Shown here: in pieces, positions 6,398 through 57,146 of the stretch
Numbering within the stretch: position 1 is the first letter of the stretch
How the letters are laid out: every line of letters begins with the position of its first letter
Virus record (IMG/VR): IMGVR_UViG_3300037502_002993
Coordinates: 156,599 to 220,598 of that record
DNA length: 64,000 nt
Reading direction: 5' to 3' (one strand)
Made by a program: the position numbers and the translations under genes
Notes under the pieces: model-generated
Seen by the model: the letters and a program-made list of their open reading frames with translations, nothing else
Databases searched by the model: none
What the model was told of the DNA's origin: nothing

Positions 6398-9300
6398 ATG
6401 GCACAGCAGAAGTTTGATATCTTTTTTCGACGTGTGGGGATTCGTGATCGGGCCCACCTTGCCCGACCGCGTCTGTTCCCATTTGGGGAGTTCGCCTTCC
6501 CGTTTGAGAGTATCTATCACTTTAACCAGAGCAATGTGCACAATGGACCGACCCGAAACGACCCTGTACTGCAGAGCGTGGCCGGTCGTGTGTTCATTGA
6601 ACACGTCACTGAACTCTCCGCTACCGAGGGGAACCCCCGTAAGACTTCGATCAACGTTAGAATGTTGGAGAATGACTTCCGGCGCCGTAGTCGGGGCCTT
6701 CGCCCCTTGCGTCGTGATGAGGCACTGGCGATCAACCCCCGTAATCTGCTTGTTGTGAACTATGCCATGCTTTATCCGACCTACCGCTATACGGTGTCGT
6801 TTAAGGCGGAGTACTATCGCTGGGTTAACATCGCCAGTACCTTCTGGCAGCGGGTAGCGGATCTCCATCAGCGTTTCCGCTGGCATCAGTTCGTGGAGGT
6901 GGGTGTCCCTGAGCGGGTGCCTGGGTATGAGGATTTTCTTCGTATCAGTAATGGCATCACGGCAAAGTCGCTCGATGCCTTTGCCGAACCCGGTGCCTTA
7001 GACCTAGTGGATCTGTGGCAGTGGATGGGGGAGTCCCGTGAGGCGTCAAACCTCGCCAAGGTGAAAGACCCCAGTCTGGTGAACCTGATCTTCCGGGTAC
7101 GGGGTCATTTCTGTCTCATGAACCTGGGACTGATCGACCAGTGGCGCAAAGCCCCAGAGGGGGAGTTGGCCCTTGAAGGGTTTGGATTGGAAGAGTGGGA
7201 GGAGGTTGGTCAGGAGATCGCCTCACTGGAGAGTGTGCAAAGTGATATCTTAGCGCCCACTCAACTGCAACGGCTGTTTCTCGCCCTGCTAAGGCGTCTT
7301 GGGAAGGTACAGAGTGGAGAAGAGGGGGTAGCGGACCCTGAAGAGGAAGCGCCCGTAGAGCGCGCCCAGGAGGCACCTAAGCGCATTACCGTCGATCAGG
7401 GGGATGACGATCCTGAAGGTGCAACTTCATCAAGCGGTACTGTAGGGGAGGTCAGTTCGAAAAAAGAGGACGATGTTCTCTCACTGCCACCTTTAGACGA
7501 TGCGCTTAAGTTCCCTGATTTCGATCAGGAACCCGAACCCCCTGCTGAGCCTGACCCGAAAAGTGTGACCTACCGACCAGAGCGAGTCACACCCCCGCGA
7601 GAAGAGCGCCCGGTAGTGGAGAGTGATGACACTGAGGGCGATTACAGTACGGCACTTAAGGCGTATGCCGATCAGCAACTAGAAGCGGGACTGATCACGG
7701 CAGGTGCGCATAAACGGATACTGGCCGAGGCAGAACACTACAAGACGCTACCCAACCCATACGGGGATGAAGGGACCTTAGGGGAGAGTCTTGAGATCAC
7801 TCAAGAAGACCTCTCACTTGAGGATCGTGAGACCTTCCCTGACCGCGATACCATCATTGACAAATCCATGCTGAAGAGCTCTCCACGGGAAATGACCCGG
7901 AAGTACGTGGAAAAGACCCTTAAGAAAGACGTCATGAATGCCGTGTTGGCAGCGACTCAGCACCAACAGGTGGTGATCAAGCGGTATAACGTGGAAGTGG
8001 TTCATGACAACATGAATCACTTTGAGGTCCACACGCTAACCTTGAAGCCCATTCATGGTCGGCAGTCCACTGTGCGGTTTCGTCTCCCCGTGGTAGATAA
8101 AGACGGGCGTTTCATGGCAAATGGCCAGCGAAATCGGCTTCGTTTCCAGCGTGCGGATTAAAACTCTACCCTACTGTATAGTTTTTTCAGTAGAGGTAAG
8201 TGATAATGGGACAACCACTTAAGTATACAACTGAAGATTTTATTGACACAGCTACCATGATGTTCGGTGACCACCTTAGCTACGAGAAAGCCGTTTATAG
8301 GGGTAAACGTCAGCGCCTTATTGTAACATGTACGCACCACGGGGAGTTCGATGTAAACCCACTGGTGTTTCTGATGAGTACCCACGGCTGCGCCAATTGT
8401 GCTAGGGATGAAACAAAAGAACGCTTCATACGTCGTTCTTTGGAACTTCATGGTGATCGTTACGACTATAGTCTCGTTGAAGTGGACGGATATACAGACC
8501 CTGTTACGGTTGTCTGTAAAACCCACGGTGCATTCGAAACATCTATTTACGGACATTCTGTAAGGGGCAATCAGTGTCCTAAATGTTCACGAGAACGCGA
8601 CCGTACCTGCCCTAACGAGTGGATTAAAAAAGTTAAGAAGATCCACAAGGGTAAGTACGACTATAGTAAGGCAGTCTACATTCACGGTAAGTTGCCAGTT
8701 ACGATTATCTGTCCGCACCACGGGGAGTTCACCCAGCCAGCACGCTCCCACTACGCGGGACATGGATGTAAGCAGTGTCATATTCAGTTTGTTGCTAGGT
8801 CGAATAAAGAGAGATTTGTTAGGCAGGCCAAAGAAAAACATGGTGTTCAGTATGATTACAGCCGCGTAGTGTTTTTGACGACAAAGGAAAAGGTTGAGAT
8901 ACTCTGTCGTAAACACGGACCGTTCTGGGTAACCCCGAACGCGCACGCATCTAGTGGCGCGGGCTGTCCACGCTGCATTGAGTCAAAGGGTGAACGAAGA
9001 ATTAGATTATTCCTAGGGAACCATAAAGTTCGGTTTATTCAGGAATATCGGATCGAACCCTTCAGGTATAGATACGATTTCTTCTTACCTGATTACAACT
9101 GCGTAATAGAACACCATGGTGGTCAGCACTACATGCCTGTTAAACGTTTTGGAGGGGAAAAAGCCTTTAAGCAATGTGTGCAGCGAGATAAGAACAAAAA
9201 ACACATCGCAAAAAGGAAAGGGATTACTTATCGAGTCACTAACTACAAAATGATGAACAACAGCAAACTCGAAAAGAATTTAACCCGCATCCTTCTAGAA

Positions 9301-12300
9301 CTCGGTCACTCTCTCGACCACTAACCCATTATTACCTATGGTCCGCTTAAAACCCCCCTAACTGCGGGAACCTGCTAATGATGCTGTTACTACCACTTGT
9401 CGGGGGAAACCCACGGCAACACCCACTCCAGTAATGGAAGTAGTGGGCAGGGTAAAAACGTAACAGCTAGGCACAACCGACGCAACGAAGTCCCTACGTT
9501 GGTCAATCGACCAATATGGGATGTGTTCAGAGGCCATCGAAAACTACAGCTTGTTTAATGCAAGCCTAATGACACAGGTATAGAACCCTGTGGTCTCCAC
9601 GGAGATTAAAGTGAGTAGAGTAGCTGATTTCTATATCGGCGAAACGGGGGGCTTCTGTTTGCTATTCACGAACCAGAAGAAGATATGGTCCAATTTGAAT
9701 TGATTGCTTCCAATTCGTAAGATCTCTCCAAGCAGGGTTGCTCTCACCTCTTACTATAATAAAACGTTTGTCGACCGCTCTTCTCGCTCTACGAATAACT
9801 TTGCTCAATGGGTCACACGCCAAATGACCCAGATCGGACTTGATCCGGATAACGACCAGATCACTAACCTGAAGTTAGGTAATGCGTTTGATCAGTCCAT
9901 TGAAGTGCCAAGGGTTTACTCCTTGCTCTCAGCGCGCTTTACGCAATTTGCCGTAGGGCCACTACAGTTCTACTTGAGCTACCATAAACGAGCTGCTCAT
10001 TTTGAACAACATGGGATACGGGTAGAACAGGTAGAGAAAGAAGGGCGAACGGTAATCGGGATGGATCGTGAGTCATTAAGTCCCATCACGGTAGATGCCA
10101 GTGACACTTTCTATCTGGGCGATGAGCCCTTAGGTACTCTGTGTCAGGTAGTGGGACTTCCCGAAGCCAAAGCACCGCTGGATATCGCGGAGGTAGGGGT
10201 TTCCAATAAGGTCATCCCGGTGGGGTTGGTGCTGGCTTACCAGATGGGGCTGTCTAAACTCATCGAGAAACTTAATTGTGATGTGGCCAGACACCGACGG
10301 GGCAGTCGGTTTGAAATGGCCGATGATGAGTACAGTGTGGTCTTTCAGGATGAGGTGCTTGTCTTCTCGCGGTTGGATCGACGGGCCTCACTGGTGTTGG
10401 CGGGACTGAATCGCTATCACCGCGCCCTACGGCAATTCAGTGTCTGGGACTTTGATCGTAAAGACGTCTACCACAACGTCCTTCTGGATCAGGGCCTTGG
10501 GGTGCGCTACCTGCGGGAAATCGATACCCTCTTTAATGTCTGGGTTGATCCCATCACAAAAGGACTCCTGGAGGAGATGGGGGAACCCACTGACTTTGGA
10601 GGACTGCTCCTCAGAAGTGCTGACCTACTGCTACACGACCACGCTCCCAATGAGGTAGAAGGGGAGTACATGCGCTATCGGGGGTATGAGCGCATGGCAG
10701 GGATGGTCTATGGGGAGCTGGCGAGGGCCTGCAAAGCCTATCACGCGCGCAGTCACTACGGTGATGCTGCAGTGGATCTAAATCCCCACCAGGTGTGGCA
10801 GCGCATTGTGGGTGACCCCTCATCCATGATCGTGGAGGAAGCCAACCCCTTTACGGTGGTCAATGAACAGGAAATCATGACCTATCGTGGAGATGGCGGT
10901 CGTAGTGGTAAGTCCATGGTGAAGCGGACGCGTATCTACTCTGACACTGATGTCGGGGTAGTGAGTGAATCCACCCTAGATTCGGGAGATGTCGGGGTAG
11001 TGGCGTACCTGGCCCCTGATGCGAACTTCACCTCCACTCGGGGATTGACCCGACGTTACGATAAAAGTAAGGATGGCGCAGCAACCCTCCTATCCACTGC
11101 TGCACTCAATGCCCCTTGTGCGGACAGAGATGACGCCAAGAGAATCCGATAAGTTGGTTCCCCCAGCAGGTAACTGTTGGGTAAACACTCCTCTAATTGC
11201 TGGGACCTCTCGTAAGACCTTAGGTACGATCCCGTTCCGAAAGGAAGCCATGGATAGCCGGGCCTGTAAGAATCCTAAGGATAGAGACAACCATGCAGCG
11301 AAGTCCCTAAGCCTACTCAACGAGTAGGGATGGGATGTGTTCATCGACTATCGAAAGGCGCCCATTAGGGCGAACTGAGTAGAGTAGGGCCAAGCGGTAG
11401 GCCGCTAACGTGGAATGGCGTTAGTTATAAGTCCTTTAAACCGAAACGGGGAGCTTCCTACTTGTTAAGAGAGGAAGAAGATATAGTCAGTCCTTTAGCG
11501 AGAGTTAAAGGTAACCATGGAGTGGTTAGCTCGATCTAGCGAATCGGGTTTGGAAAGGGAAGGAGGATTTCACCCAATTAGGGTGATCTTCATCTGTGTA
11601 CAGCGCAACTTTATCTCAGTGCAAGCAAGACAGGGCATTTGGGCGGAAGGGTATACGGTCACGCCACTAAGGACGGGGTATGAACAGGTACTGGCCTCAC
11701 GGGTAACAGATCTGTTCGCGACCATGGCACAGCAAGATGGGAAGGTTACGTCAGTGGAAGAGAATTCCATTGTGGTGACCTATAAGGATGGGACGCAGGA
11801 GAAGGTCCTTCTTGGGAAGCGCTACGGTAAAGCCGCTGGGTATACCTACCCACAGACCTTGGTAACGGATCTAAAGGTAGGGGATAAGGTTAAGTCAGGT
11901 GGGGTGATTGCGTATAATCGTAACTATTTCATGCCTGATACCTTTAATCCCGGTCATGTGGTATTGAAAGCGGGGGTAATGTGTAAGGTGGCCCTGATGG
12001 ACCCCATCGATGCTTTGGAAGATGGGTCTGTTATCTCTGAGGAGATCGCCAAGCAGTTCACCACGCAAACCAGTGAGGTCAGGACCCTGCAAGCGCGTTT
12101 TGATCAGTCTGTCAGGGACCTAGTGAAAGTCGGCGATCATGTGGACTTGGATTCCATTCTATGCATTATTGAAGACCCGGAGATCCGCGATAATCCCCTG
12201 TTCAATGACATTGCCATGGATACCTTAAGAAAGCTCTCTTCCCACACCCCACGAGCAAAAGTGACAGGGGTGGTGAGCCGAGTTGAGGTGTTCTATCATG

Positions 12301-12734
12301 GTGAGTTTGAGGACATGTCAGAGTCCCTTCAAGGTGTGGCGGGTCAATCCAATCGTCGTCGCCGTCAAGAGGCCAAGGCCTCAGGGCAGCCCGCTTTCGA
12401 TGGTCAGGTGGATACGGGCTTTCGTATCCGTGGGGCCGCCCTTGATCCGGATAGCGTGGCCATTCAGGTGACCATTGATCATGACGTGGGGGTAACTGCG
12501 GGGGATAAGTTGGTGTACGCCAGCCAGCTGAAGTCCGTCATTTCTCGTGTCATGACGGGTCGTAATGAAACCGAAAGCGGTGAAGCCATCGATGCCCTCT
12601 TTGGTAACACCTCTGTGGAGGATCGGATGGTGTTGTCCCCCAAACTCATGGGCACCACCAATACCCTACTCCGGGTCCTTTCCCAACATATCGCATCTGT
12701 CTATCGAGGACGTAGTGATGTCAAGAGACCGTAA
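6398..12734 (+). CDS. Virion RNA polymerase beta-like subunit (phiKZ gp178-like), three exons: 6398-8158, 9707-11145, 11606-12734 (~1442 aa spliced)
   Basis: Splicing restores RFQRAD|LPIRKISPSRVALTSYY and DDAKRI|NFISVQ in frame; beta motifs EDG, GDK...QLKSVIS, DALFG in exon 3. Confidence 0.9.
8159..9706 (+). mobile_element. Group I intron 1 (1548 nt) with homing endonuclease ORF
   Basis: 5' exon ends in U (GCGGAT), intron ends in G9706; IGS GTCCGC at 9341-9346; core elements CTAACTGCGGGAA, GTTCAGAGGCCA, GAAACGGGGG, AAGATATGGTCC in 9350-9695. Confidence 0.9.
8206..9324 (+). CDS. Intron-encoded homing endonuclease: four zinc-ribbon (DUF723-like) repeats plus C-terminal Vsr/EDxHD-like nuclease
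   Basis: Four repeats of Y(D/S)Y...C..HG.F...C..C; C-terminal ESKGE...YDFFLP..N..IEHHGGQHY...RD..K; GAGGT SD; visibly more A/T-rich than the flanking exons. Confidence 0.85.
   Translation: MGQPLKYTTEDFIDTATMMFGDHLSYEKAVYRGKRQRLIVTCTHHGEFDVNPLVFLMSTHGCANCARDETKERFIRRSLELHGDRYDYSLVEVDGYTDPVTVVCKTHGAFETSIYGHSVRGNQCPKCSRERDRTCPNEWIKKVKKIHKGKYDYSKAVYIHGKLPVTIICPHHGEFTQPARSHYAGHGCKQCHIQFVARSNKERFVRQAKEKHGVQYDYSRVVFLTTKEKVEILCRKHGPFWVTPNAHASSGAGCPRCIESKGERRIRLFLGNHKVRFIQEYRIEPFRYRYDFFLPDYNCVIEHHGGQHYMPVKRFGGEKAFKQCVQRDKNKKHIAKRKGITYRVTNYKMMNNSKLEKNLTRILLELGHSLDH
11146..11605 (+). mobile_element. Group I intron 2 (460 nt, ORF-less)
   Basis: Exon GAAU pairs with GUUC (11157-11160, U.G at the splice site); P10 AAGTTG (11151-11156) is complementary to 3' exon CAACTT; core CTAATTGCTGG, GTTCATCGACTA, AAGATATAGTC; terminal G11605. 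Confidence 0.92.
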
Positions 12735-12927
12735 GAAGATCAGTCCCGATCTCCTCTACACGCAAAACCTGGCCGTGGTCAGTGCCGCCCTTGAATTGGG
12801 CGGCTGTGTCCTGTGTGAGGTCGCCGGTGGCGAAGAGCTCTCCAATCGCCTCAATGATAAAACCCATGAGAAGAAGGACTTCCAGGAACTCCTGGCAGCC
12901 CGCCTGATGGTCAAACTGGGAGTCTGA
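12718..12927 (+). CDS. Small hypothetical protein (69 aa)
   Basis: ATG 12718 with GAGGA SD, overlapping the end of the RNAP gene and abutting the next gene. Confidence 0.6.
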   Translation: MSRDRKKISPDLLYTQNLAVVSAALELGGCVLCEVAGGEELSNRLNDKTHEKKDFQELLAARLMVKLGV

Positions 12928-12930
12928 ATC

Positions 12931-14403: not shown

Positions 14404-14417
14404 TGGGAGTGTGACCG

Positions 14418-15140
14418 ATGGATGTGACCACCCTAGTGCGTGATCCGGATTATATCACACGCCACCTGGTCGTAACTGATGGGGGTGGGGTGGTCACTCG
14501 CCGCCCCACCAAGATCATGATTCCTGAACGCTACGCTGAACGCCATCTCGCCTCCCTAGGGGGCGAGACGTATATTCTCGGACTGTTTGGGATCATTATG
14601 GATGAGAAGTACTATGGGGTTTCCTTTGTGAACGCCATGGTGCGCATTACCCCAAGCTCCACCACCACAGTAGATGTTGGCGGAGATGCCTATTTGGAGT
14701 TTTCATTTGAACCAGGGGACCAGGTCATCTATAGTTTAGACCTGGTGAAGAACGACATTCTGACCTTTTACATCTACGATGAACATGTGGCGAAGGGCAG
14801 AATCCCTTGGTACATGAATTACCTAGATCTGGCCTATCTGTTTGACAGCGCCAAAGAGCATGCTGGGATGAACTTGGGTAACCGTGCTGTATTGGAGCTG
14901 ATGCTCTCCACCATTGCCCGCGACTCCAATAATGTCGGGGCGTTGTATCGCCACATCATGCAGGGTCTCACTTACGTTTACCAAATCCCCCCGAAATGGA
15001 TACCATTTAGAAGCGTGATCTGGAACACCAGTGATACCACGAGTAAATTGATCGGGGGGTATTTCAGTGATGCCGTAACGTCAGCCCTGGTCAACCCTAG
15101 TGAGCGGGTAGAGCGGATTGAGGGACTTTTGAGGACGTGA
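14418..15140 (+). CDS. Conserved phiKZ-like protein (gp176-like)
   Basis: 240-aa ORF ending ...SALVNPSERVERIEGLLRT; lies between RNAP and protease genes. Confidence 0.6.
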   Translation: MDVTTLVRDPDYITRHLVVTDGGGVVTRRPTKIMIPERYAERHLASLGGETYILGLFGIIMDEKYYGVSFVNAMVRITPSSTTTVDVGGDAYLEFSFEPGDQVIYSLDLVKNDILTFYIYDEHVAKGRIPWYMNYLDLAYLFDSAKEHAGMNLGNRAVLELMLSTIARDSNNVGALYRHIMQGLTYVYQIPPKWIPFRSVIWNTSDTTSKLIGGYFSDAVTSALVNPSERVERIEGLLRT

Positions 15141-15141
15141 T

Positions 15142-15963: not shown

Positions 15964-16200
15964 CGTCACCGTCACACGGACCACTCACCAGTCCGGGAGA
16001 GCGGCGTGAGTGCCCATCAGTTATCTAAGATGGGGACGAGTGCCGCTCACCAGTGGGGGCGTGCCGCATCGGGTCACTGGCGTGCCCCGCGTAAGCGTGG
16101 GGTCCCTGTGACCTGTTAACATCAACAACCACCGTAGGGGGTGGTCGAGGACTCAAGTGACGCCTTGATCCGGCCACCCTGCTCTTTGGGAGACTTGGTA

Positions 16201-16968: not shown

Positions 16969-16981
16969 ACAAAAAAGAAAG

Positions 16982-17022
16982 CGACATAGTTGCCCTCCCG
17001 TAATGGGAGGGCGGTTATGCCG
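16982..17022. terminator. Bidirectional hairpin flanked by CGACATA / TTATGCCG
   Basis: GCCCTCCC-GTAAT-GGGAGGGC between convergent genes. Confidence 0.75.
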
Positions 17023-17032
17023 GAGTTTGCAG

Positions 17033-17503: not shown

Positions 17504-17623
17504 AAGAGGATATCCTTTAAATGCACGTGGTGGTTAAAACGCCTTATAGACCTCTGTAAGCGCTTTTGTGTAGTGGGGGTAGGGCTATGTACCCCCTAAC
17601 GTTTTAAAAAGCGTAGAAGTGCC

Positions 17624-26210: not shown

Positions 26211-26212
26211 AT

Positions 26213-46284: not shown

Positions 46285-46297
46285 TGAAAACTCCCGG

Positions 46298-47497: not shown

Positions 47498-47534
47498 AAT
47501 TAAGTTTCCTTTTTAACCGTTCAGGAGTTGTTCA

Positions 47535-48602: not shown

Positions 48603-51490
48603 GTACCTTTAAAGACCGCATGGACGCCGTTCGTTTCAATCCGGGCCTGATGCAGCAACTTGCACTGGAAGAGCTGCGAGAGCAGTTGAGCCAGCGGGGA
48701 AACTTTGATGTCCCTGACCCAACTAACCCCTTCGTCTATATGTTAGAGTGTGCCACCACCATGTCCGCCCACGCCATGGGGGAGGGGGAGAGCCTACTGG
48801 GTAAGGTCTACCCGAGTCTTGCCGTAGAGCGTGAAGACCTCTATCGCCATATGTCGGACTGGGATTACCTAGGTCGGTTTGCTGCACCCGCCTGGACGAC
48901 TTTCGACCTATACCTGAGTCGTGATGAGGTCATGGCCAAGACCAGACCCGTTGGTAATGAGGGGGTGCGTCAGCTGACCATTCCCCGATTAACGGAGTTT
49001 ACGGTGGCCGATACCACCTTTACCATGCAGTTCCCCATCCACATTCGCTTAATGGCACATGGGGGCCTTCAGGTAGTGTATGACAGTGACGTCACCTCTC
49101 CGATCCAGCAACTGACCACGAACCTGGTGGATTGGGACAGTGTGCGCCTTGGGGGTGAGGAGTTATTGGTTCTCCATATCCCGGTTGGTCAATTTAAGAT
49201 CAGAACCTTCACTGAAACCCTAAACCAAGCGGCTGGGTATCGTAACGCTTACGGTTTCTCCGACAGCTTCTACACCGCCCGGGTATTTGTGTCGCGTAAT
49301 GGTCAATGGGAAGAGATTCTGACCACCCATTCTGAGTGGGTCTTTGATCCCACTCGTTTGACGGCGGTATTGAAGGTACTTGAGGGGCAGGTGGAAGTTA
49401 GGATTCCACAGATCTACTTCAGTCAGGGCATGGTACCAGGTGAGGTGAGGGTAGACGTGTACAGCACCAAAGGTGAGCTTGAGCTCGACCTTGGGTCTTA
49501 CGCCCCCGATCAATTCGAATACCGCTTAAATGCCATTGATGACGACCCAACCTATACCGCTCCCTTCAAGGCCTTCCAGCGCCTGCAGGCGATCAGTCCC
49601 CTGCGGGTCAGTGGCGGCAGTGACGCCATGCCTTTTGTGGACCTGCGTGATCAGGTGATTCAAAATGCACTGGGGTCCTCTACGGTGCCGATTACCAGTG
49701 CCCAGGTGAGTGCAGAGTTGCAGCGTCGTGGCTACAGCATTGTTACCAATATCGACAATATCACCAACCGTCAGTTCCTGGCCACTCGACAACTCCCCTC
49801 TCCAGGACGGGGGATGACATCAGCAGGGCTTGGTTGTCTGATGGGTGAGTTGATGGCAACTTTTGATGAGTTGGCCGCATCAACCCACGCAGTGCACCAC
49901 GGAGAGCACATTACGCTTCTTCCCTCGATGCTCTACGAGTACCGTAACGGTCGAGTGGTGCCCCTACTGGATGGGGAGATTGAGCGCATCATTGGACTCA
50001 ATAATGACGGTAAGGTCACTGAGGTGAACAATCGTCAACTCCTGTACACCCCGCTTCACTATGTGCTCGATGGACGCAATCAGCGTTTCTCCGTAAGGCC
50101 CTACTACCTGGATCAGCCGGAAATCATCCGTAAGACCCTAGTGGGGGATAACAACAGCACGCAGATGCTAATCTCTGTCGATCAGTACCAGATCGAACGT
50201 ACGCCCTGGGGGTATCAAATCACCGTGTCATTGGTTACCGATGAACGGGTGGATGAGCTCGATGAAGAGGACGTTCATGTACAACTCTCCTATCAGCCAG
50301 TAGGAGAACGCACCTACGCCTCAGTGATGGGTACGCTTATCGAGCATGAGGGGGATGAGCGTATCTACCGGTTTGAGATTCGCACCAACTACGACATTGA
50401 TGCTAATCATCGACTGAGAACTACCAACCTCTCGATGTTCGATGAATTCCAGGTTAACCATTTTGTTCCGTTGGAGCATGACTTTGATCTGAGCTTTATT
50501 GTCACCGGCCAGGACATGTTGTTCTATCGGCGTACTGAGCTTGATGACATGGTCAGCCAACACTTCTTTGATGGGGAGGTAATGGTGGTGGGTCGTGAGC
50601 GACTGCGTATTCGTCTTGGGAGTGCCCTAACAGGACTCTGGGATCGAAGTCGTACGGTCGTCACGGAACTCTCCTATAAGCGCTATCCAGCTAATGTGCC
50701 CTATATCCATGAACGCACGGTGCTTAGGACTGACGAAGATGGTCAAACCATCATCACCATGGACGATGAAGGTAATGTTCAGTATGAGGTACTCTTTGAG
50801 GCGGGAGAGCCCGTCCTTGATGAAGAAGGGAATGTCAGGATTCGTCACTTCCAAGGAGACGCCATCCTAGATGCCAATGGGGAGCCTGAGTTAGTGGAAC
50901 CGCGAAAGCTACTGCGTGAATTCACCATGCTCTTCTTTGACGGAGTCTACTATGTCGTTGATAACCAGGACGCTCTGAACTACCGTCAGGAGATCCCGAG
51001 CAATCTGGTCAGGTGGTTGGAGAATGACATTGGACAGATGCAAGAGCAACTCCTTGAACAGTCAGAGATTAAACTCCACCCCACAAAAACCCTTGGAGAG
51101 ACCAATGCGGTAGTTGCACAAGGACTGCGCAGTACGCTACAGATCAACCAGCATCTCTTTGTGAACTACTATCTGACCAACACGGCTTATGAGGACATGG
51201 GACTGCGTCAGTCATTGCTAAGTGCCACACGGCGTACGGTCGCTGAAATGGTATCCCGGCGTACGGTATCGATTTCAGATATCACGACACGCCTGAAGGC
51301 ACTGGGGGGCGATAGTGTTATCAACCTGGATGTCGGGGGATTGGGAGGGGATAACAATTTCTCAATCGTCAGTGTGGATGACGATGTGGTTAGGCTCTCA
51401 CTTGGTGCGCGAGCTGCCCTACTCCCCGACCAAACTATCACCGTTCAGGATGACATTGATATCAACTTCCTGAAACATCAGGTATCTTAA
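48599..51490 (+). CDS. Baseplate wedge-like protein (gp87 position)
   Basis: 963 aa; DPTNPFVYMLE, LYRHMSDWDY, VSGGSDA...LR. Confidence 0.65.
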   Translation: MSTFKDRMDAVRFNPGLMQQLALEELREQLSQRGNFDVPDPTNPFVYMLECATTMSAHAMGEGESLLGKVYPSLAVEREDLYRHMSDWDYLGRFAAPAWTTFDLYLSRDEVMAKTRPVGNEGVRQLTIPRLTEFTVADTTFTMQFPIHIRLMAHGGLQVVYDSDVTSPIQQLTTNLVDWDSVRLGGEELLVLHIPVGQFKIRTFTETLNQAAGYRNAYGFSDSFYTARVFVSRNGQWEEILTTHSEWVFDPTRLTAVLKVLEGQVEVRIPQIYFSQGMVPGEVRVDVYSTKGELELDLGSYAPDQFEYRLNAIDDDPTYTAPFKAFQRLQAISPLRVSGGSDAMPFVDLRDQVIQNALGSSTVPITSAQVSAELQRRGYSIVTNIDNITNRQFLATRQLPSPGRGMTSAGLGCLMGELMATFDELAASTHAVHHGEHITLLPSMLYEYRNGRVVPLLDGEIERIIGLNNDGKVTEVNNRQLLYTPLHYVLDGRNQRFSVRPYYLDQPEIIRKTLVGDNNSTQMLISVDQYQIERTPWGYQITVSLVTDERVDELDEEDVHVQLSYQPVGERTYASVMGTLIEHEGDERIYRFEIRTNYDIDANHRLRTTNLSMFDEFQVNHFVPLEHDFDLSFIVTGQDMLFYRRTELDDMVSQHFFDGEVMVVGRERLRIRLGSALTGLWDRSRTVVTELSYKRYPANVPYIHERTVLRTDEDGQTIITMDDEGNVQYEVLFEAGEPVLDEEGNVRIRHFQGDAILDANGEPELVEPRKLLREFTMLFFDGVYYVVDNQDALNYRQEIPSNLVRWLENDIGQMQEQLLEQSEIKLHPTKTLGETNAVVAQGLRSTLQINQHLFVNYYLTNTAYEDMGLRQSLLSATRRTVAEMVSRRTVSISDITTRLKALGGDSVINLDVGGLGGDNNFSIVSVDDDVVRLSLGARAALLPDQTITVQDDIDINFLKHQVS

Positions 51491-51495
51491 CCTAA

Positions 51496-51536
51496 GGACA
51501 TAACGCCCTCCCCACTTGGGGAGGGCACTTATGCCG
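51496..51536. terminator. Bidirectional hairpin flanked by GGACATAA / TTATGCCG
   Basis: GCCCTCCCC...GGGGAGGGC between convergent genes. Confidence 0.75.
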
Positions 51537-51537
51537 G

Positions 51538-52893
51538 TTACCGCATGGTACGAAGCTTTTCAATGGTAGTTTTCACCAGACTTTCTGCTTTTTCCTTCGT
51601 ACGCTCACTGGCGGCCGTTTCCATGACCCCCTTGTAATGGTACTGCATGGCCTGCTCAAGCAGACCGTAATAGTACTTCATGAAGTGAAGACGTAACTGA
51701 CAGGCTTTCTCTAATGCCTTACAGACCGACACCAGGGCATGAATGGATTGGTTATACCCCCTCAACGCATCCACGATGGCATCGGCATCCGCTTGAGTGG
51801 AAGCAGTGGATAGGTGTTTAATCCCGCGTTCAAACCCTGCCAGGTTCTTCTCTACCCGAGAGAGCAGTTTCAGTGGGGTCTCGTAAGCATACCCACTTGA
51901 CAGAAGCTTACTCGGACGCGTGGTAAGCAGATTGGTCTTGACATTATCCGTCAGGAATGTAGAGGCTTGAGACACGTCCAGTAGCAGGACAATCGTCTCA
52001 TTGGCTTGGCGCAGTTTCTCCATCGGTCGCTTAAGTGCCGCAAACGCCGACATGCCATCGCCCCCCTCCACCAGGATGTCAATGGCGGTCTCTGACTCCC
52101 GCAGCAGATGCTCCACGGTGGGAGTCAAATCCTCAGTGAGCGTCTGTAGCGTGGTGGCGTGCTTCCCCTCCCCCATGACCACCAACGTAAGTTCCGTCTG
52201 AGGTAACTGCTTGAGCATGGCCTCTTGATGGCGCTTTGACCAGTCAGGAAAACCAGCACCACCCATGTGATTAAGGCGCACCATCTCCATGTAAGCATCA
52301 AACACCAGTGTGAGCTTACGGTAATAGAGATCGATTTGGTGGTTGACCTGAAGCTGAGGTAGAAGGTGTTTCTTCAAGAACCGATAAGAGCTCTTGATAA
52401 ACTCCATAATCTTCTTGAACCACGCCTTGATGGTATCGAGTACCGTACGGGTGAAGGATTCCTGGGCAATATCCAGTGACAGAGAAGAGCGCTCTTGTGT
52501 GAAGAAGCCGAAACCTTCAACACCAAGATCCAGTTGGCTCAGGTGGCGTTCACGAATGGCCATCAGGGTCGCCATATCGGCCTCAGAGACGCCCTCACGC
52601 GACACCGTGCGGTGAAGCTGATGTAGGATACCCAGATCACGCTCAAAGCCCTCTAAGGACAGCTGTAGGGCCTTCAGAGACTCCTGACTGACTGTTTCAT
52701 CGTCATCTTCTCCTGACGTCTCTCTGTCCTCCGCTTCAACTTCCTCGGATTGCGCTTCTTCGGGCGAGTCTTCACCTTCTCCGTCACCAGCATCCTGACC
52801 TCCTTCATCGAGTACGGCGTCTACCTCGTCGAAATGGGCTTCTTCCTGCTGATTATCGTTTTCCAGTGCTGGAGTCCCGTCTAGATTAAACAT
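51538..52893 (-). CDS. Internal head protein with acidic propeptide
   Basis: ALE, SQE, SLE, GVE, AQE sites; GAGGT SD. Confidence 0.7.
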   Translation of the reverse strand: MFNLDGTPALENDNQQEEAHFDEVDAVLDEGGQDAGDGEGEDSPEEAQSEEVEAEDRETSGEDDDETVSQESLKALQLSLEGFERDLGILHQLHRTVSREGVSEADMATLMAIRERHLSQLDLGVEGFGFFTQERSSLSLDIAQESFTRTVLDTIKAWFKKIMEFIKSSYRFLKKHLLPQLQVNHQIDLYYRKLTLVFDAYMEMVRLNHMGGAGFPDWSKRHQEAMLKQLPQTELTLVVMGEGKHATTLQTLTEDLTPTVEHLLRESETAIDILVEGGDGMSAFAALKRPMEKLRQANETIVLLLDVSQASTFLTDNVKTNLLTTRPSKLLSSGYAYETPLKLLSRVEKNLAGFERGIKHLSTASTQADADAIVDALRGYNQSIHALVSVCKALEKACQLRLHFMKYYYGLLEQAMQYHYKGVMETAASERTKEKAESLVKTTIEKLRTMR

Positions 52894-52901
52894 GGCTAAC
52901 C

Positions 52902-53411
52902 TCACTGCTCGTCAGGGAGGGTGTCGGAAACAGCCTCATCACCCGCCTCTTGGGGCGGTGTTTCCTTTTGAGCCTTACCCAGTACCCCTGAGGTTATCGC
53001 CGCGACATCACGCTGATAGTTGGCAAAGCCACGATCTGAGACGAATGACTTGAACAGCTGTGCTTCGTCGTCGGTCAGGTGTTCGGCCTGAAGCTCGGAT
53101 TTGATCAGGAACTTGATCAGGGTAGCATTCTCCACCCCCGTCAGAAGCTCGTAGCGGACAGACACCAGGTTGTGGAAGTAGGAGCGGCACAGACGCAGGT
53201 CCAGCGGGGTGCGTTCGTTAATGGCGCCGACCAATTCCTTCAGATCGCGACTGTACTGGTCGCACAGTTCCTCGCAGGTGAGCTCTGGGTCAATAGGGAT
53301 CGAATAGGCCAGGGCCTGCGCCACAGCCAGGGCCTTCACCTCCCGTTGGTGGGAGGGGGGGAAGTTGAGGTGTTGAAAAGCGTCAACCAGTTCGTATGCC
53401 ATGCGTTTCAT
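52902..53411 (-). CDS. Hypothetical protein
   Basis: GGAG SD, within the operon. Confidence 0.6.
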   Translation of the reverse strand: MKRMAYELVDAFQHLNFPPSHQREVKALAVAQALAYSIPIDPELTCEELCDQYSRDLKELVGAINERTPLDLRLCRSYFHNLVSVRYELLTGVENATLIKFLIKSELQAEHLTDDEAQLFKSFVSDRGFANYQRDVAAITSGVLGKAQKETPPQEAGDEAVSDTLPDEQ

Positions 53412-53414
53412 GGG

Positions 53415-54746
53415 TTAGCTCCGGGCGGTGGTTTTCAGGCGTTCGGCATGAGCGAAGAGATCACTTCTGAACAACCGCTCTAACAGTTGCTCGGCTTGAA
53501 CGCGATGGTAGGTACGGCGTACCAAGGGATTGGTGAGAATACCGATAGACTCGATCAGGGTCAGCTCATCGGTCATCTTATCAAGAATGGCTTTTACTTG
53601 GGCGATCTCAGCAAGGACCATTTCCTTGCCCACGTTATCGGTTGCGCGAAGAACTGAGATCAACTCGCGGTGGATCTTTTCAAACCGCTCTTTCGGGTTA
53701 TCGTAGGGACTGTGTTCAGTATTAACTCCCCACATATTGGTAAGGAGAACAGCAGATACCACGATTCCGAGTACGGGGGCAGTAACCAGAAGACCAACGG
53801 TGGCGGGGAGTGCCAGCAGAGAGAGGAGGTTATGGAACGCTCTCGCTGACCGGGTGTGGTAGAAGCGACCCCCGCCAAAGAGAGCACTCATCTTGTTAAG
53901 GCTTGTGGTGACGTGAACTCCATAGCCCATACGGGTGGCGAACATATCAGCGAGCTGCTCTGAGCGCAACTCCCCCGTCATGGTACCCTTACTCCACAAG
54001 TGGTTTCGGTTACTCGTTGCTGCAGTTAACAGCACGGCTTTACGAACGTTCGCCTCGTTATCAGGGGACTGGATCAGTTCCTCCCGAACGGTCTTATTCG
54101 GTACGTTCTTCTCAAGCCAGGTACGGGAGAGCAGTTCGATCCGGTATGTATTGGGTTTCTTCCCCAGAACCACATCGATTCCATCGGTCAGGAAGTAGTT
54201 CATCCACACCATCTCACCGATGGTAGCGAGGTTGAAGAACGCGTGGCCGATTTCATGAAGGATGATGGCAGTGAGTTCTTCATCAGTGAAGAAATCCTGC
54301 TGTCCTTTAAGAAAATGTGCTGGGGGGAGCATCAAGTCGAAGGGGATCTCTTGGAAACTTCCTGTTACCGTTACTTTCTTAAGATCAATGGTGGATTTCA
54401 TGTGGTGTTTGGTGTACTCCTTGTGGAGTACCTCCTCCATCCACTTAGAAAACGCACCTAGCTTTCCAGCATCCCCCTGATACCCAATAACGGGGGCGGT
54501 CATGATGGCAAAGTCAAAAGGGTTGTCCATTAACGTTACGGTGAGTTTAAGCCCAGTCAGCTTGGTGATACCTCCGATAAGTGTGGAGAAATCTGCCTTT
54601 TTGAGCTTTTTGGCGTTCAGTGCTCGAATGCGTTTGACCTCGCCAAGGACCAACTCCGCCAGGTTAGACGTGTGATTCAGGTTAATAAACTCTTGAGAGA
54701 CGTTGTGCTGAAACGCCTTATCGGTGTACTTAGCAATACGTGACAT
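53415..54746 (-). CDS. Virion zinc metallopeptidase-like protein (M48-like)
   Basis: AIILHEIGH and EQLADMFATRMGY motifs, hydrophobic hairpin, SQE site near the N-terminus. Confidence 0.7.
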   Translation of the reverse strand: MSRIAKYTDKAFQHNVSQEFINLNHTSNLAELVLGEVKRIRALNAKKLKKADFSTLIGGITKLTGLKLTVTLMDNPFDFAIMTAPVIGYQGDAGKLGAFSKWMEEVLHKEYTKHHMKSTIDLKKVTVTGSFQEIPFDLMLPPAHFLKGQQDFFTDEELTAIILHEIGHAFFNLATIGEMVWMNYFLTDGIDVVLGKKPNTYRIELLSRTWLEKNVPNKTVREELIQSPDNEANVRKAVLLTAATSNRNHLWSKGTMTGELRSEQLADMFATRMGYGVHVTTSLNKMSALFGGGRFYHTRSARAFHNLLSLLALPATVGLLVTAPVLGIVVSAVLLTNMWGVNTEHSPYDNPKERFEKIHRELISVLRATDNVGKEMVLAEIAQVKAILDKMTDELTLIESIGILTNPLVRRTYHRVQAEQLLERLFRSDLFAHAERLKTTARS

Positions 54747-54848
54747 GTGGTTTCCTCAGCGGGTGGGTGAAAGCTCATACCTTTTCCAATTCAAGAAATG
54801 GTCCAATACTCACTGCAAGCATCCTGTAGGCAAACAGGAGAGGTTGTC

Positions 54849-57146
54849 ATGCAAAAAATCGATCCCGAGCAGGTGTTGGGTCGCGAAGCCAAACACATCA
54901 CGTATGTCCGTGATCAATTCGGTAAGTCCCATGATGCGCTCTTCGTCAAGGAGTGGATTCACCTAAAGGATGGCACCCGCATACCGAGACTCCATTGTGT
55001 CGAAGACTACCGCCGGCCGTTTTGGCTAGTGCACGAAGGACAGCGGACCTATAAGGACCGCAAAGATTTCATGCCGCTCAACAAGCTCCAGAAATACCAT
55101 TCTACCCAGATTGATCTATCCCGTAACATCGCTACCCTCTTACGGGACTTTAGTTTTGGTCCTAACCCACCCCTGAAAAAACTTGCCCGTAATCCTTACC
55201 TCTTTGGGACTGACGTCACCACCCCTTGCCTACTTAAGGCACAGTACCGCAAACGTTATCCTGACTTATCGTCACCGAACCTGGTTGCAGGGGGTGACGT
55301 TGAGACTGATGTGGTCCATCACACCAATGACATTATCTGCATGTCAGTGACCTGTAAGCAAAACGCCATCTTGGTCTACTTAAAGCGTTGGATCGAGGAC
55401 ATTCCCAACATCATCGAAGAAACCAAAGAGGCTGCCGATAAGTACATTGGAGAGGACCTTAAGAAGCGTGGCATCACGCTTGAGGTGGTCGTATGCGATA
55501 CCCCAGGTCAAATCGTCATGACGTGTCTCAATAAGCTCCATGAGTGGAAACCGGACTTCTTCTCGTTCTGGAACATGGACTTCGATATGGGGCGGATGCT
55601 AAAAGCCCTAGAGGATGATGGTATCGACCCTAAGGATATCTTCTCTGATCCCTCCGTCCCACCGAACTATCGCTACTTTGACTGGCGTGAAGGACAAGCG
55701 CAAAAAGTCACCGCCTCAGGAAAGGTCATCTCTATCAACATCGAAGACCGCTGGCCTTGGGTTACCCACCCCGCCACCTGGCAGGTGATCGATGCCATGC
55801 CTGTGTATCGAGGACTAAGACGGGTAGATGGAAAAGACCCTTCTTACAAGCTGGGATATATCCTAGAGAAGGAGAAGGCAGGGAACAAGCTCCAGTTTGA
55901 TGACATGCGACACTTAACCGGACTGCGCTGGCACCAAGAGATGCAAAAGCATCACAAGGTAAAGTATGGGGTGTACAACCTATACGACTCCCTTGATCTG
56001 GAAATCCTTGATGAGAAGACGGAAGATCTATCACGTAAGATCACCATGTTCTCCGTCAACTCCGATTACAAGAACTTCAACTCCAACCCAAAACGACTGT
56101 GTGATGCCTTGCACTTCTGGCACTTGGAAAAAGGGGAGGTCATTGGGGCGTCTTCTGATGAGGCGGATCATGAGTTAGATGTTCACGTCATTGGGGCGGA
56201 TTCCTGGATCGTTACCCTACCTACGTACATGGCCGGGCCGGAGGGGGCTAAGGTCATGGAGGAGCTGCCTGACTACAAAACCCTTTACTTTAACCATGTT
56301 GCGGATCAACACTAAATCAAGGTCCCCTCGGGGCGAAATCCCCGTGTGAAACCTCTCTAATTGCTGGAATGCCCTGAAGAGCTGACCTACCACAATGCTG
56401 CCCGAAAGGGCCGGTTAAAAAGCATGACCCCGAAGGGGCTTCGTCTACGGATGAAGGGTTTGACAACAGGTCGGATGTGAATGCGCTATCACAAGGGGTA
56501 ACCGTGGGACCTAAGGTCCCCTTTAGCAGCCAAGGGCCTACCGGTCCCTCCTTGGAGGGACCCATGGTCAAGGTTCATCGACTATCCAAAGGCGCCCATC
56601 AGGGCGAACCGAGTAGAGTAGGGCCAGTGGTCTGGTGGGTTGTCAGTGTGGAATGGCACTGGCGGTAAGTCCCTTAAACCGAAACGGGAGGCACCTTACC
56701 AGGTAAGGCTGGAGGTGAAGATATAGTCAGTCCAGTAAAGAAATTTACTGCAAGTACCTAATCCTAATAACATGTAGTGGTTAATAAACCAGACTACATG
56801 AGGTACCGAGCTTGACCTAGTTAGCGCTTATCCCAGTGCCAGTATGATGCTCAACATTGGGCGTGATACGTGCATTATGGAGTTTTCTCAAATACAGGGA
56901 CTCTCCGAGCACCGTCGTAGAGAGTTGGGAGTGAACTTGACAGGGGGGAGCACAAATGCCCTTGAGATCACTGAAAAGATCTTTGGCATGCCGCCTGTGG
57001 ATCAGGTGTTAAAGGACTTCTGTGAGAAGCACGGCTATCCCCTTCCTGAAGAACTGATAGGGGACGATACCGTGTACGTAGAAACCGATGGGACTTATGT
57101 ACCCCTAGATGAGGAAGCCGTCGATAATGCCATCCCTGATTGGTAA
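54849..57146 (+). CDS. Split family-B DNA polymerase, exonuclease plus motif A part (phiKZ gp82-like); exons 54849-56306 and 56811-57146 (~597 aa)
   Basis: Exo motifs DVET, WNMDFD, YNLYD; splicing restores HVAD|LDLVSAYPS (PolB motif A-like). Confidence 0.88.
56307..56810 (+). mobile_element. Group I intron 3 (504 nt, ORF-less)
   Basis: Exon GGAU pairs with GUCC (56322-56325); P10 TCAAG (56317-56321) is complementary to 3' exon CTTGA; core CTAATTGCTGG, GTTCATCGACTA, AAGATATAGTC; terminal G56810. Confidence 0.92.

What the first reader, a model, noticed from the sequence alone, without database searches (positions are those of the whole stretch)
8152..56813. Introns 1 and 3 occupy the same 10-nt site, TGCGGAT^CTT, in two unrelated polymerase genes
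Seen: reconstructed empty sites are gTGCGGAT|CTTcc (RNAP beta) and tTGCGGAT|CTTga (DNA polymerase), both Ala-Asp|Leu. Inference: this fits ectopic spread by IGS-directed reverse splicing, or the single intron-1 nuclease recognising both sites so that ORF-less intron 3 protects the polymerase gene and is mobilised in trans. Coincidence helped by the U requirement and a conserved Asp codon cannot be excluded.
Basis: partly seen in the sequence, partly recalled or inferred. Interest (0 to 1): 0.72.

Follow-up and report, generated by a model that had tools for sequence, protein, structure and literature searches.

The report
Two unrelated introns, one shared site

Summary
Intron 1 (8159-9706, vRNAP beta) and intron 3 (56307-56810, family-B DNA polymerase) both lie in TGCGGAT^CTT, Ala-Asp|Leu. 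Profile continuity and uninterrupted homologues fix both junctions to the base.

- Introns 1 and 3 are the least alike of the genome's seven group I introns and fall in different clades, so neither is a copy of the other.
- Ala-Asp-Leu is ancestral in both genes.
- Both introns pair a GUCC-type guide with GGAU. This fixes the Ala codon as GCG and the Asp codon as GAU.
- CUU pairs with intron 3's P10 guide.
- Only T(-7) and the beta Leu codon are unconstrained, a chance of about 0.015-0.05.

A third intron, in beta' NADFDGD outside the window, also follows GCGGAT. It has intron 1's core and intron 3's guide. A close relative of intron 3 sits at another GGAT^ site in a different phage's polymerase. 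Guide-compatible ectopic colonisation within one recombining intron pool is therefore the best reading; the transfer mechanism is unknown.

The shared-nuclease idea is not supported: two relatives carrying intron 1 and its EDxHD-type nuclease have empty DNA polymerase sites. It is not excluded either.

The parts
6398..8158 (+). Virion-RNAP beta gene (phiKZ gp178 homologue), exon 1. It ends ...CGT GCG GAT (Arg-Ala-Asp).
   Evidence: phrog_3148 profile positions 5-574. tblastn matches phiKZ gp178.
8152..8158 (+). The 5' flank TGCGGAT of intron 1. GCGGAU forms P1 with the guide.
8159..9706 (+). Intron 1: a group I intron with the nuclease ORF in the P1 loop. It starts after U and ends in G.
   Evidence: Core RF00028 41.2 bits, E 3.6e-10. 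Orthologues occupy the same site in G018, G006 and G007.
8206..9324 (+). Homing endonuclease gene: four DUF723 zinc-ribbon repeats plus a C-terminal Vsr / I-Bth0305I-like (EDxHD) nuclease domain.
   Evidence: Pfam DUF723, phrog_559 and phrog_9084. AF2 mean pLDDT 89. Foldseek match to 3r3p with probability 1.0 and TM 0.80, and to 1cw0.
9341..9346 (+). Internal guide GUCCGC of intron 1. It lies after the ORF and about 16 nt before P3.
   Evidence: The MFE fold of the ORF-deleted intron pairs it with GCGGAU (-9.9 kcal/mol). AUGGUCCGC is conserved in the orthologues.
9707..11145 (+). RNAP beta exon 2. It starts CTT CCA (Leu-Pro).
   Evidence: phrog_3148 profile positions 575-1054.
11146..11605 (+). 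Intron 2: an ORF-less group I intron at AGAGAAT^CAACTT, about four codons downstream of the conserved Asp-Asp where the PhiPA3 gp210 intron sits.
   Evidence: RF00028 78.2 bits. Profile continuity 1054|1055. PMC11620839.
11606..12734 (+). RNAP beta exon 3.
   Evidence: phrog_3148 profile positions 1055-1423.
54798..56306 (+). Split family-B DNA polymerase (phiKZ gp82 homologue), exon 1. It ends GTT GCG GAT (Val-Ala-Asp).
   Evidence: phrog_3011 profile positions 2-494. tblastn matches to phiKZ-like phages.
56307..56810 (+). Intron 3: an ORF-less group I intron.
   Evidence: RF00028 54.6 bits. Present at this site in four other metagenome runs, identical in one, closely similar in one and as a diverged variant in two.
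56317..56327 (+). Guide of intron 3. UCAAG forms P10 with CUUGA, and GUCCCC forms P1 with G.GGAU.
   Evidence: Rfam alignment. Duplex energies -3.5 and -4.0 kcal/mol.
56811..57146 (+). DNA polymerase exon 2. It starts CTT GAC CTA GTT AGC GCT TAT CCC, that is L-D-L-V-S-A-Y-P, which is motif A (DxxSxYPS).
   Evidence: phrog_3011 profile positions 495-569. Translation.

Best explanation
Two non-sister group I introns from one recombining intron pool of a phiKZ-like (Chimalliviridae-like) jumbo phage have each settled at an Ala-Asp|Leu codon string. One is in the virion-RNAP beta gene. The other is two codons before the motif A Asp of the family-B DNA polymerase.

The identical decamer breaks down into five parts.
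(i) Ala-Asp-Leu predates the introns in both genes. This is shown.
(ii) The 5' splice site needs U, and both introns pair a GUCC-type guide with GGAU (GUCCGC in intron 1, GUCCCC in intron 3). This fixes GAU and the G wobble of GCG. The pairing is shown; its selective role is inferred.
(iii) CUU(GA) pairs with intron 3's P10 guide UCAAG. This is shown.
(iv) T at -7 is unconstrained.
(v) The CTT Leu codon in beta is unconstrained. Together (iv) and (v) are a coincidence of a few per cent. This is calculated.

Site choice was probably filtered by guide compatibility, because only insertions after NGGAU can splice out of an essential gene. That would explain why members of both intron lineages turn up at several different GGAU^ sites. 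This is inferred.

How the DNA copy reached each new site is unknown. It could have been illegitimate repair after a nuclease cut, or reverse splicing.

Intron 1 homes with its own EDxHD-type nuclease. Intron 3 has no ORF and is inherited passively or through recombination with other intron copies.
For: Junctions.

Amino-acid context is ancestral.
- In the DNA polymerase, HVAD|LDIVSTY is conserved in the uninterrupted close relatives.
- In beta, the motif is QR(A/V/G/T)D|(V/Q/K/L/I)PIRK.
- In beta', NADFDGD is invariant.

Synonymous positions track intron presence. Alleles carrying an intron have GCG in 7 of 8 cases (6 of 7 when the Fisher test was run, before G007 was added) and GAT in all. 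Empty alleles have GCG in 3 of about 30 and GAT in about 2 of 30. Uncorrected Fisher tests give p = 2e-4 and 3e-6.

Pairings. Intron 1's P1 forms in the MFE fold at -9.9 kcal/mol. Intron 3's P1 and P10 appear in the Rfam alignment and in duplex energies. Intron 1 has no P10.

Introns 1 and 3 are not sisters.

Guide-compatible spread.
- Intron B in beta' lies at (T)GCGGAT^TTTGAT. It has an intron-1-type core (73% identity over 277 nt, the same level as intron 1's true orthologues) and the guide AUCAAG|GUCC, identical to intron 3's.
- The L097 intron is related to intron 3 at E 9e-28, with the same guide and P2. It sits at GTGGAT^ in a Trp-Ile codon pair, not at an Asp codon.
- DNA polymerase introns in G001, G002, L088 and L108 lie 6 nt downstream, at (A/C)TGGAT^; the 3' exon begins CTTGTC in G001, G002 and L088 and ATTGTC in L108.

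Residual chance: 0.015-0.054.
Against: - A causal role for the guide in choosing sites cannot be separated from adaptation of the guide after insertion. The closest relative of intron 3 (G002 intron X) sits at CGAAAT^CCAACT with guide GUUUC. A member of the intron 1 clade in G001 sits at GGGACTT^TGACGG with guide GAGUCCC.
- The introns are mosaics, so lineage assignments depend on which region is compared.
- T at -7 is shared by all three GCGGAU sites of this genome in the mRNA. The chance of that is about 7% (codon usage). A nuclease with a 14-bp core centred on the site would explain it better (PMC3239194).
- The relatives are few and not phylogenetically independent.
- No splicing, cleavage or RNA data exist for this uncultivated phage.
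Confidence: 0.5

Rival explanations
1. Pure coincidence under coding and splicing constraints. Each intron arrived independently, drawn only by the general persistence of introns at conserved codons, and each guide adapted to its exon afterwards. Guide complementarity played no part in choosing the sites.
For: - The amino-acid context is ancestral.
- Given Ala-Asp and the U requirement, the guide must read GUC+N, so similar guides are forced by the exon.
- The residual synonymous identity has probability 0.015-0.054.
- Introns of the same clades sit at quite different flanks: AAT^GCG, GGT^GAT, GAT^GCA, AAAT^CCA and GACTT^TGA. At least five sites fall in or just upstream of NADFDGD, so colonisation does not need a matching site.
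Against: - The L097 relative of intron 3 keeps the same guide and P2 at a different, non-Asp GGAT^ site.
- Intron B repeats GCGGAT with an intron-1-type core.
- The downstream DNA polymerase introns of G001, G002 and L088 again show GGAT^CTTG.
- Also requiring the Ala-Asp-Leu tripeptide to coincide lowers the a priori chance to roughly 1e-3 or below per pair.
Confidence: 0.28
2. One nuclease serves several introns. The intron 1 EDxHD-type endonuclease recognises the shared core TGCGGAT^YTT in beta, the DNA polymerase and beta'. The ORF-less introns 3 and B would both protect those genes from cleavage and be mobilised in trans.
For: - The nuclease has a Vsr / I-Bth0305I-like domain. I-Bth0305I has a 14-bp core centred on the cleavage site and tolerates single substitutions (PMC3239194). 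Ten of 14 core positions would be identical in the DNA polymerase.
- T(-7) is shared by all three sites although neither guide pairs with it.
- Trans-homing of a defunct-nuclease intron is known in T4, with mobE and I-TevIII (title and abstract of PMC2790892).
- The ORF keeps every residue that is invariant across the 24 aligned sequences.
Against: - G006 and G007 carry intron 1 and its nuclease, but their DNA polymerase sites are empty (GCAGAC|TTG and GCTGAC|CTT). Their beta' site B is also empty.
- G001 and G002 have a DNA polymerase intron, yet G001's beta site 1 is empty.
- An intact TGCGGATCTTGA persists elsewhere in the genome.
- The flanks outside the decamer match only at chance level.
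- In this genome's DNA, beta' site B is preceded by intron A, not by T.
Confidence: 0.12
3. Direct ectopic copy. Intron 3 is a copy of intron 1, or the reverse, moved by guide-directed reverse splicing into the other gene's mRNA, followed by reverse transcription and recombination.
For: The 5' exon heptamer is identical, and both guides fit it.
Against: - There is no sequence similarity between the two introns beyond the universal core. They fall in different clades. Intron 1 lacks P2 and carries an ORF in the P1 loop, while intron 3 has P2 and no ORF.
- No reverse transcriptase gene is found in the genome.
- The full reverse-splicing pathway has never been demonstrated (PMC3984707).
Confidence: 0.03

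Closest known systems
PhiPA3 gp210 intron in the virion-RNAP beta gene of a nucleus-forming jumbo phage (Birkholz et al. 2024, PMC11620839)
   Same: It is a group I intron with a homing endonuclease interrupting the phiKZ gp178 homologue at a conserved acidic motif. The phage family is the same, and the introns here interrupt the same gene.
   Different: The PhiPA3 intron lies directly after the conserved Asp-Asp (phiKZ D1072) and encodes an HNH nickase. Here, intron 2 is about four codons downstream of that Asp-Asp and has no ORF. Intron 1 is about 480 codons upstream and encodes an EDxHD / Vsr-like enzyme.
I-Bth0305I (EDxHD family) in the recA group I intron of Bacillus phage 0305phi8-36 (PMC3239194)
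   Same: It is an intron-encoded phage homing endonuclease with a C-terminal Vsr-like PD-(D/E)xK domain. Foldseek gives probability 1.0 and TM 0.80 against 3r3p.
   Different: There is no detectable sequence match to the PDB chain. The N-terminal DNA-binding part here is four DUF723 zinc-ribbon repeats. The ORF sits in the P1 loop. Its target and cleavage have not been tested.
Related nuclear rDNA group I introns at heterologous sites, taken as circumstantial evidence for reverse-splicing spread (Bhattacharya et al. 2005, PMC1299323; review PMC3984707)
   Same: Related introns occupy different sites that share only the few bases complementary to the guide: intron 3 and the L097 intron, and intron 1 and intron B.
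   Different: The sites here are protein-coding codons of three essential polymerase genes in a DNA phage with no reverse transcriptase gene found. The introns are mosaics, which suggests DNA-level recombination between copies.
T4 td, nrdB and nrdD (sunY) introns, and trans-homing of the nrdB intron by mobE (PMC2790892)
   Same: Several structurally related group I introns sit in nucleotide-metabolism genes of one phage. Some are ORF-less or have defunct ORFs, and mobilisation in trans is possible.
   Different: To my knowledge (recalled, not tested here) the T4 introns do not share an insertion-site sequence. Here three sites share GCGGAU, and seven introns lie in polymerase genes.

Membership tests
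Group I intron (Rfam RF00028) | The covariance-model score reaches the curated gathering threshold of 50 bits. | tested here: met
   Intron 3 scores 54.6 bits and intron 2 scores 78.2 bits. The intron 1 core scores only 41.2 bits (E 3.6e-10), below the threshold, because the ORF splits P1 from the core.
Group I intron (Rfam RF00028) | The 5' exon ends in U paired with G of an internal guide (P1), the intron ends in G, and removing it restores an uninterrupted conserved reading frame. | tested here: met
   U and G lie at both junctions of introns 1, 2 and 3. P1 of intron 1 forms in the MFE fold. P1 of intron 3 appears in the Rfam alignment. The exon joins are exact against profiles and against uninterrupted homologues.
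Group I intron (Rfam RF00028) | Self-splicing of the RNA. | not testable with these tools
No spliced reads are available.
EDxHD (I-Bth0305I-like) homing endonucleases | A Vsr-like PD-(D/E)xK catalytic domain. | tested here: met
   The AF2 model has mean pLDDT 89.2. Foldseek matches 1cw0 (Vsr) and 3r3p (I-Bth0305I) with probability 1.00, and TM 0.80 against 3r3p.
EDxHD (I-Bth0305I-like) homing endonucleases | Conserved acidic and His residues in the catalytic domain. | tested here: inconclusive
   D291, E302, H308 and D328 are invariant and E263 is nearly invariant across 24 aligned sequences. They were not mapped residue by residue onto the published motif.
EDxHD (I-Bth0305I-like) homing endonucleases | Cleaves the intron-less allele next to the insertion site. 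| not testable with these tools
   This needs purified protein.
Ectopic spread by guide-directed reverse splicing | Demonstrably related introns at heterologous sites that share only the guide complement. | tested here: inconclusive
   Not met for introns 1 and 3, which are unrelated. Met for intron 3 and the L097 intron, and for intron 1 and intron B. Other clade members have changed both guide and site.
Ectopic spread by guide-directed reverse splicing | A reverse transcriptase is available to copy the recombined RNA. | tested here: not met
   PF00078 finds no match in the 220.6-kb genome. The host is unknown.
Trans-homing by a shared nuclease (mobE / I-TevIII type) | The ORF-less intron co-occurs with the nuclease-bearing element among relatives. 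| tested here: not met
   G006 and G007 have intron 1 plus the nuclease but empty DNA polymerase and beta' B sites. G001 has a DNA polymerase intron but an empty beta site 1.

The most novel reading that the evidence does not exclude
A guild of group I introns in a nucleus-forming jumbo phage targets one sequence class, TGCGGAU^YUU (Ala-Asp|Leu or Phe), in all three of its polymerase genes: virion-RNAP beta, beta' NADFDGD and DNA polymerase motif A. A single EDxHD-type nuclease, encoded only by intron 1, would recognise that shared core. It would drive or police the ORF-less introns in trans, with guide-directed insertion supplying the new sites.
Probability: 0.12. Interest if true: 0.8.

Novelty: new member of a known kind. 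Interest (0 to 1): 0.5.

Why it matters
How group I introns reach new (ectopic) sites is a long-standing open question. The evidence so far is circumstantial and comes almost entirely from rDNA (PMC3984707). This phage lineage offers a protein-coding test bed:
- seven introns in one genome, all in polymerase genes;
- three sites sharing GCGGAU;
- related introns at different GGAU^ sites in related phages;
- clear mosaicism between copies;
- one intact EDxHD-type nuclease.

Cleavage, splicing and reverse-splicing assays on three short synthetic targets would separate guide-directed from nuclease-directed spread.

The finding itself is less than it looks. The decamer is mostly a by-product of an ancestral Ala-Asp-Leu string and the pairing rules of group I splicing, and the two introns flagged are not copies of one another.

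Tried and rejected
- Megablast of both gene regions against GenBank phages found nothing. Relatives were reached only at the protein level.
- A single-protein locus scan for beta found only 4 loci. Searching the genomes behind the DNA polymerase loci replaced it.
- Automatic placement of 5' splice sites at 10 nt into each Rfam hit was unreliable for introns with ORFs or long P1 loops. Junctions were set by protein continuity instead.
- Exact-pattern scans of viral contigs for uninterrupted alleles (CAYGTNGCGGATCTTGAY..., CARMGNGCGGATCTNCC...) returned only unrelated chance hits with no homology.
- Read laying on 55900-57200 showed intron 3 in four other runs but no intron-less joint. The only joint listed (56379 to 56679, short side of 27 letters) probably reflects other introns sharing core blocks.
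- A sequence search of the nuclease against PDB chains found nothing useful, and NCBIfam gave nothing. Only the fold search identified the domain.
- I looked by eye for a pseudopalindrome around the site, as in I-Bth0305I targets, and found only the central GATC.
- The idea that intron B arose by whole-intron transposition of intron 1 was rejected. Its 3' tail matches introns A, C and 4, it carries an insertion of about 45 nt shared with introns 2 and 3, and its guide matches intron 3's. Core replacement by recombination is equally possible.
- I initially thought the beta site was the Mg-binding ED loop or the NMQRQAVP motif. I dropped this because it was not tested and the gene order does not fit.


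Full report
WHAT THE GENOME IS. The window is the last 64 kb of a 220,598-bp viral record with 120-bp direct terminal repeats. Its DNA polymerase and multisubunit RNA polymerase genes are 40-55% identical in protein to those of phiKZ, PhiPA3 and other nucleus-forming jumbo phages. The interrupted RNAP gene is the homologue of phiKZ gp178, the virion-RNAP beta subunit. The interrupted DNA polymerase is the split family-B enzyme typical of these phages (PMC7598289).

TGCGGAT lies at 8152-8158 and 56300-56306. PHROG profiles run without a gap or overlap across both proposed joins. For phrog_3148 the join is 574|575, between 8158 and 9707. For phrog_3011 it is 494|495, between 56306 and 56811. Nine relatives have an uninterrupted beta gene that is contiguous at exactly this point. 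More than 26 relatives have an uninterrupted DNA polymerase that is contiguous there. Both 5' exons end in U, both introns end in G, and the frames read Ala-Asp|Leu. Rfam calls intron 3 (54.6 bits) and intron 2 (78.2 bits). The post-ORF core of intron 1 scores 41.2 bits, E 3.6e-10. Intron 2 spans 11146-11605.

THE TWO INTRONS ARE NOT RELATED TO EACH OTHER. The genome holds seven group I introns. Four lie outside the window. One is in the second beta gene, and three stand in tandem in the beta' gene.
- Intron 1's core finds intron B of beta' at E 1e-40, but it does not find intron 3. Intron 3 finds intron 2 and others, but not intron 1.
- In a maximum-likelihood tree of 16 introns from this phage and its relatives, one clade has 99/99 support. 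It contains intron 1, its orthologues in G018, G006 and G007, intron B, and an intron in the virion beta' gene of G001. Intron 3 falls on the other side of the tree.
- The architectures differ. Intron 1 has no P2 and carries a 372-codon ORF in the P1 loop, with its guide GUCCGC (9341-9346) lying after the ORF. Intron 3 has a P2 hairpin and no ORF.
A direct copy from one site to the other is therefore excluded.

WHERE THE TEN LETTERS COME FROM.
- Amino acids. The uninterrupted close-relative DNA polymerases read HVAD|LDIVSTY. Uninterrupted beta genes read QR(A/V/G/T)D|(V/Q/K/L/I)PIRK. Ala-Asp-Leu is therefore older than the introns.
- Pairing. In intron 1, GCGGAU pairs with GUCCGC over six base pairs (-9.9 kcal/mol), and this pairing forms in the MFE fold of the ORF-deleted intron. 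In intron 3, G.GGAU pairs with GUCCCC, and the 3' exon CUUGA pairs with UCAAG directly upstream of the guide as P10. The C that pairs with position -4 fixes the Ala codon as GCG. The U requirement fixes GAU.
- Association with intron presence. Alleles carrying an intron after Ala-Asp have GCG in 7 of 8 cases and GAT in all. Empty alleles have GCG in 3 of about 30 and are almost always GAC. The uncorrected Fisher tests, run on 6 of 7 before G007 was added, give p = 2e-4 and 3e-6.
- What is left over. Intron 1 has no P10. Its orthologues sit before CAA, CTA and CTA, and after CGG, CGC and CGT. In runs X4 and X5 the contigs at this site show a diverged intron variant, and the 3' exon starts TTGGAT. 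So T(-7) and the CTT in beta are free positions. With this genome's codon usage, the chance that all synonymous positions agree, given the amino acids, is 0.015, or 0.054 if G(-4) is taken as forced. Outside the decamer the two sites agree at 16 of 50 positions.

A THIRD GCGGAU SITE, AND GUIDE-COMPATIBLE SPREAD. Reading the beta' gene on the minus strand (G000 28403 to 26992) gives this layout...KAPN(AAT) | intron A | GCGGAT | intron B | TTTGATGGTGAT | intron C | GCACTG.... The PHROG profile leaves exactly six positions, ADFDGD, between the flanking exons. Uninterrupted relatives read AAC GCN GAC TTC GAY GGN GAY. Intron B therefore also follows (U)GCGGAU in the mRNA.

Intron B is a mosaic:
- its core is of intron 1 type (73% over 277 nt, as close as intron 1's own orthologues);
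- its guide AUCAAG|GUCC is the same ten bases as intron 3's;
- it shares a roughly 45-nt insertion with introns 2 and 3;
- its 3' tail resembles those of introns A, C and 4.

Further cases point the same way. A metagenome relative, L097, carries an intron closely related to intron 3 (E 9e-28, same guide and P2). It sits about 35 codons upstream, at GTGGAT^TGTTAC in a Trp-Ile codon pair, so there GGAU cannot be put down to Asp coding. Other relatives (G001, G002, L088, L108) carry a DNA polymerase intron 6 nt downstream of the window's site, at (A/C)TGGAT^, followed by CTTGTC in three of them and ATTGTC in L108. These cases fit colonisation of sites that match a GUCC guide.

The opposite also occurs. 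Intron 3's nearest relative, G002 intron X, sits at CGAAAT^CCAACT with guide GUUUC. The G001 member of the intron 1 clade sits at GGGACTT^TGACGG with guide GAGUCCC. At least five different intron sites lie in or just upstream of the NADFDGD motif across the clade. So guides also change, and a matching site is not obligatory.

THE NUCLEASE. The intron 1 ORF has four DUF723 zinc-ribbon repeats and a C-terminal domain. In a confident model (pLDDT 89) that domain matches Vsr and the I-Bth0305I catalytic domain, with probability 1.0 and TM 0.80. It belongs to a family of more than 4,000 proteins, some annotated as very-short-patch repair endonucleases. I-Bth0305I has a 14-bp core centred on its cut site and tolerates single changes (PMC3239194). 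A 10-of-14 match in the DNA polymerase could therefore matter, and the shared T(-7) is unexplained by pairing.

G006 and G007 carry intron 1 with an orthologous nuclease (46-50% identity), but their DNA polymerase and beta' B sites are empty. G001 has a DNA polymerase intron but an empty beta site 1. An intact TGCGGATCTTGA also survives elsewhere in the genome, antisense in a 745-aa ORF. I rate the shared-nuclease model at about 0.12.

MECHANISM OF TRANSFER. No reverse transcriptase gene is found, and the complete reverse-splicing pathway has never been shown (PMC3984707). The mosaic introns point to DNA-level recombination between copies. I therefore commit only to guide compatibility acting as a filter on which ectopic insertions survive in essential genes. 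I do not commit to reverse splicing as such.

OTHER SAMPLES. Contigs from four other metagenome runs cover the region. One contig is identical from 56155 to 57154. X3 contigs span the intron and its 3' junction with few differences. X4 and X5 contigs cross the 5' splice site but lack parts of the intron and differ at its 3' end, so they hold a diverged variant. No contig joins the exons without the intron. The window's DNA polymerase site is so far occupied only in this phage and its close strains.

VERDICT. Reading it as one intron, or one nuclease, occupying two genes is not supported for this pair. The decamer is mostly the footprint of an ancestral Ala-Asp-Leu string and of GUCC-type guides carried by two separate lineages of a recombining intron pool, plus a few per cent of luck. 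The wider pattern is the more interesting result. It comprises three GCGGAU^ sites in three polymerase genes, related introns at other GGAU^ sites, and three tandem introns with 6-nt and 12-nt micro-exons inside NADFDGD.

Noticed in passing
G000:C1:26993-28402, minus strand (outside the window; loci L004, L007, L008): Three group I introns stand in tandem inside the beta' NADFDGD motif: A at 28402-27936, B at 27929-27449 and C at 27436-26993. They are separated by a 6-nt micro-exon (GCGGAT, Ala-Asp) and a 12-nt micro-exon (TTTGATGGTGAT, Phe-Asp-Gly-Asp). The 12-nt exon is fully used: 6 nt pair with intron B's P10 guide and 6 nt (GGUGAU) pair with intron C's guide GUCACC.
   Followed up: partly
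Relatives G002 (L062, L074, L081), G003 (L085), G007 (L084) and G001 (L040:1647-2089): The DFDGD motifs of both beta' paralogues are intron hot spots across the clade. Sites seen are SRN|PTL, PN|AD, AD|FD, FDG|D, GD|A and, in the virion beta' gene, DF|DGD. Site AD|FD is occupied by three different intron lineages in G000, G003 and G002.
   Followed up: partly
G000:C1:13506-14790, minus strand (L003): A seventh group I intron interrupts the second RNAP beta gene at the ..LHG|KGV.. motif (the GRHGNKG equivalent). It carries at least one ORF with an HNH-like signature (HIDGNWDNLHPSN).
   Followed up: partly
window 11146-11605: Intron 2 lies about four codons downstream of the conserved Asp-Asp after which the PhiPA3 gp210 intron is inserted (PMC11620839). 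Relatives G009, G001 and G011 carry insertions of 1.1 kb to more than 1.5 kb in the same few codons. In G011 the insertion is apparently right after the Asp-Asp.
   Followed up: partly
window 63799-64000, G000:C1:94944-95153 (-) and G000:C1:164-1630 (+): There are two HEARO (IscB omega-RNA) elements. One is cut by the record end. An IscB-like ORF with an HNH motif starts just after the 120-bp terminal repeat. This is an OMEGA-type RNA-guided nuclease system in a jumbo phage.
   Followed up: partly
Loci L011-L036, junction codon of the DNA polymerase; also beta' loci L075-L087: In uninterrupted alleles the Asp codon at the intron site is GAC in 19 of 19 viral-contig relatives, although GAC makes up only 56% of Asp codons in the same genes. 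This holds even in genes that strongly prefer GAT. It may be selection against a U that would allow a functional intron insertion, or against nuclease recognition. Four metagenome alleles (L094, L095, L096, L104) do have GAT. L094 reads TCGGAT|CTTGAC without an intron.
   Followed up: partly
window 56307-56317 and 56811-56831, in runs X3, X4 and X5: Contigs from X3 and X5 match the window only through the first 11 nt of intron 3 and then diverge. X4 and X5 contigs start the 3' exon with TTGGATTTAGTGTCGGCATAC, preceded by ..ATGCGTGGG. Strain variants of intron 3 with a different P1 loop or guide and different 3' flanks therefore exist.
   Followed up: no
G000:C1:67138-67149: The only uninterrupted TGCGGATCTT in the genome is in fact the 12-mer TGCGGATCTTGA, identical to the DNA polymerase empty site. 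It lies antisense inside a 745-aa minus-strand ORF.
   Followed up: yes
window 11370-11440 and 56630-56680, and G000 about 27660-27575 (intron B): Introns 2, 3 and B share a roughly 45-nt insertion (..GGCCGCTA..GTGGAATGGC..TAAGTCCTTTAAA..) between GAGTAGAGTAG and CGAAACGG. Intron 1 and its orthologues lack it. This suggests exchange of segments between intron copies within this genome.
   Followed up: partly
window 57109-57636: The DNA polymerase reading frame stops 111 codons after motif A (the split family-B polymerase). The next ORF overlaps it by 38 nt and has a P-loop motif (GFPGVGKST).
   Followed up: no
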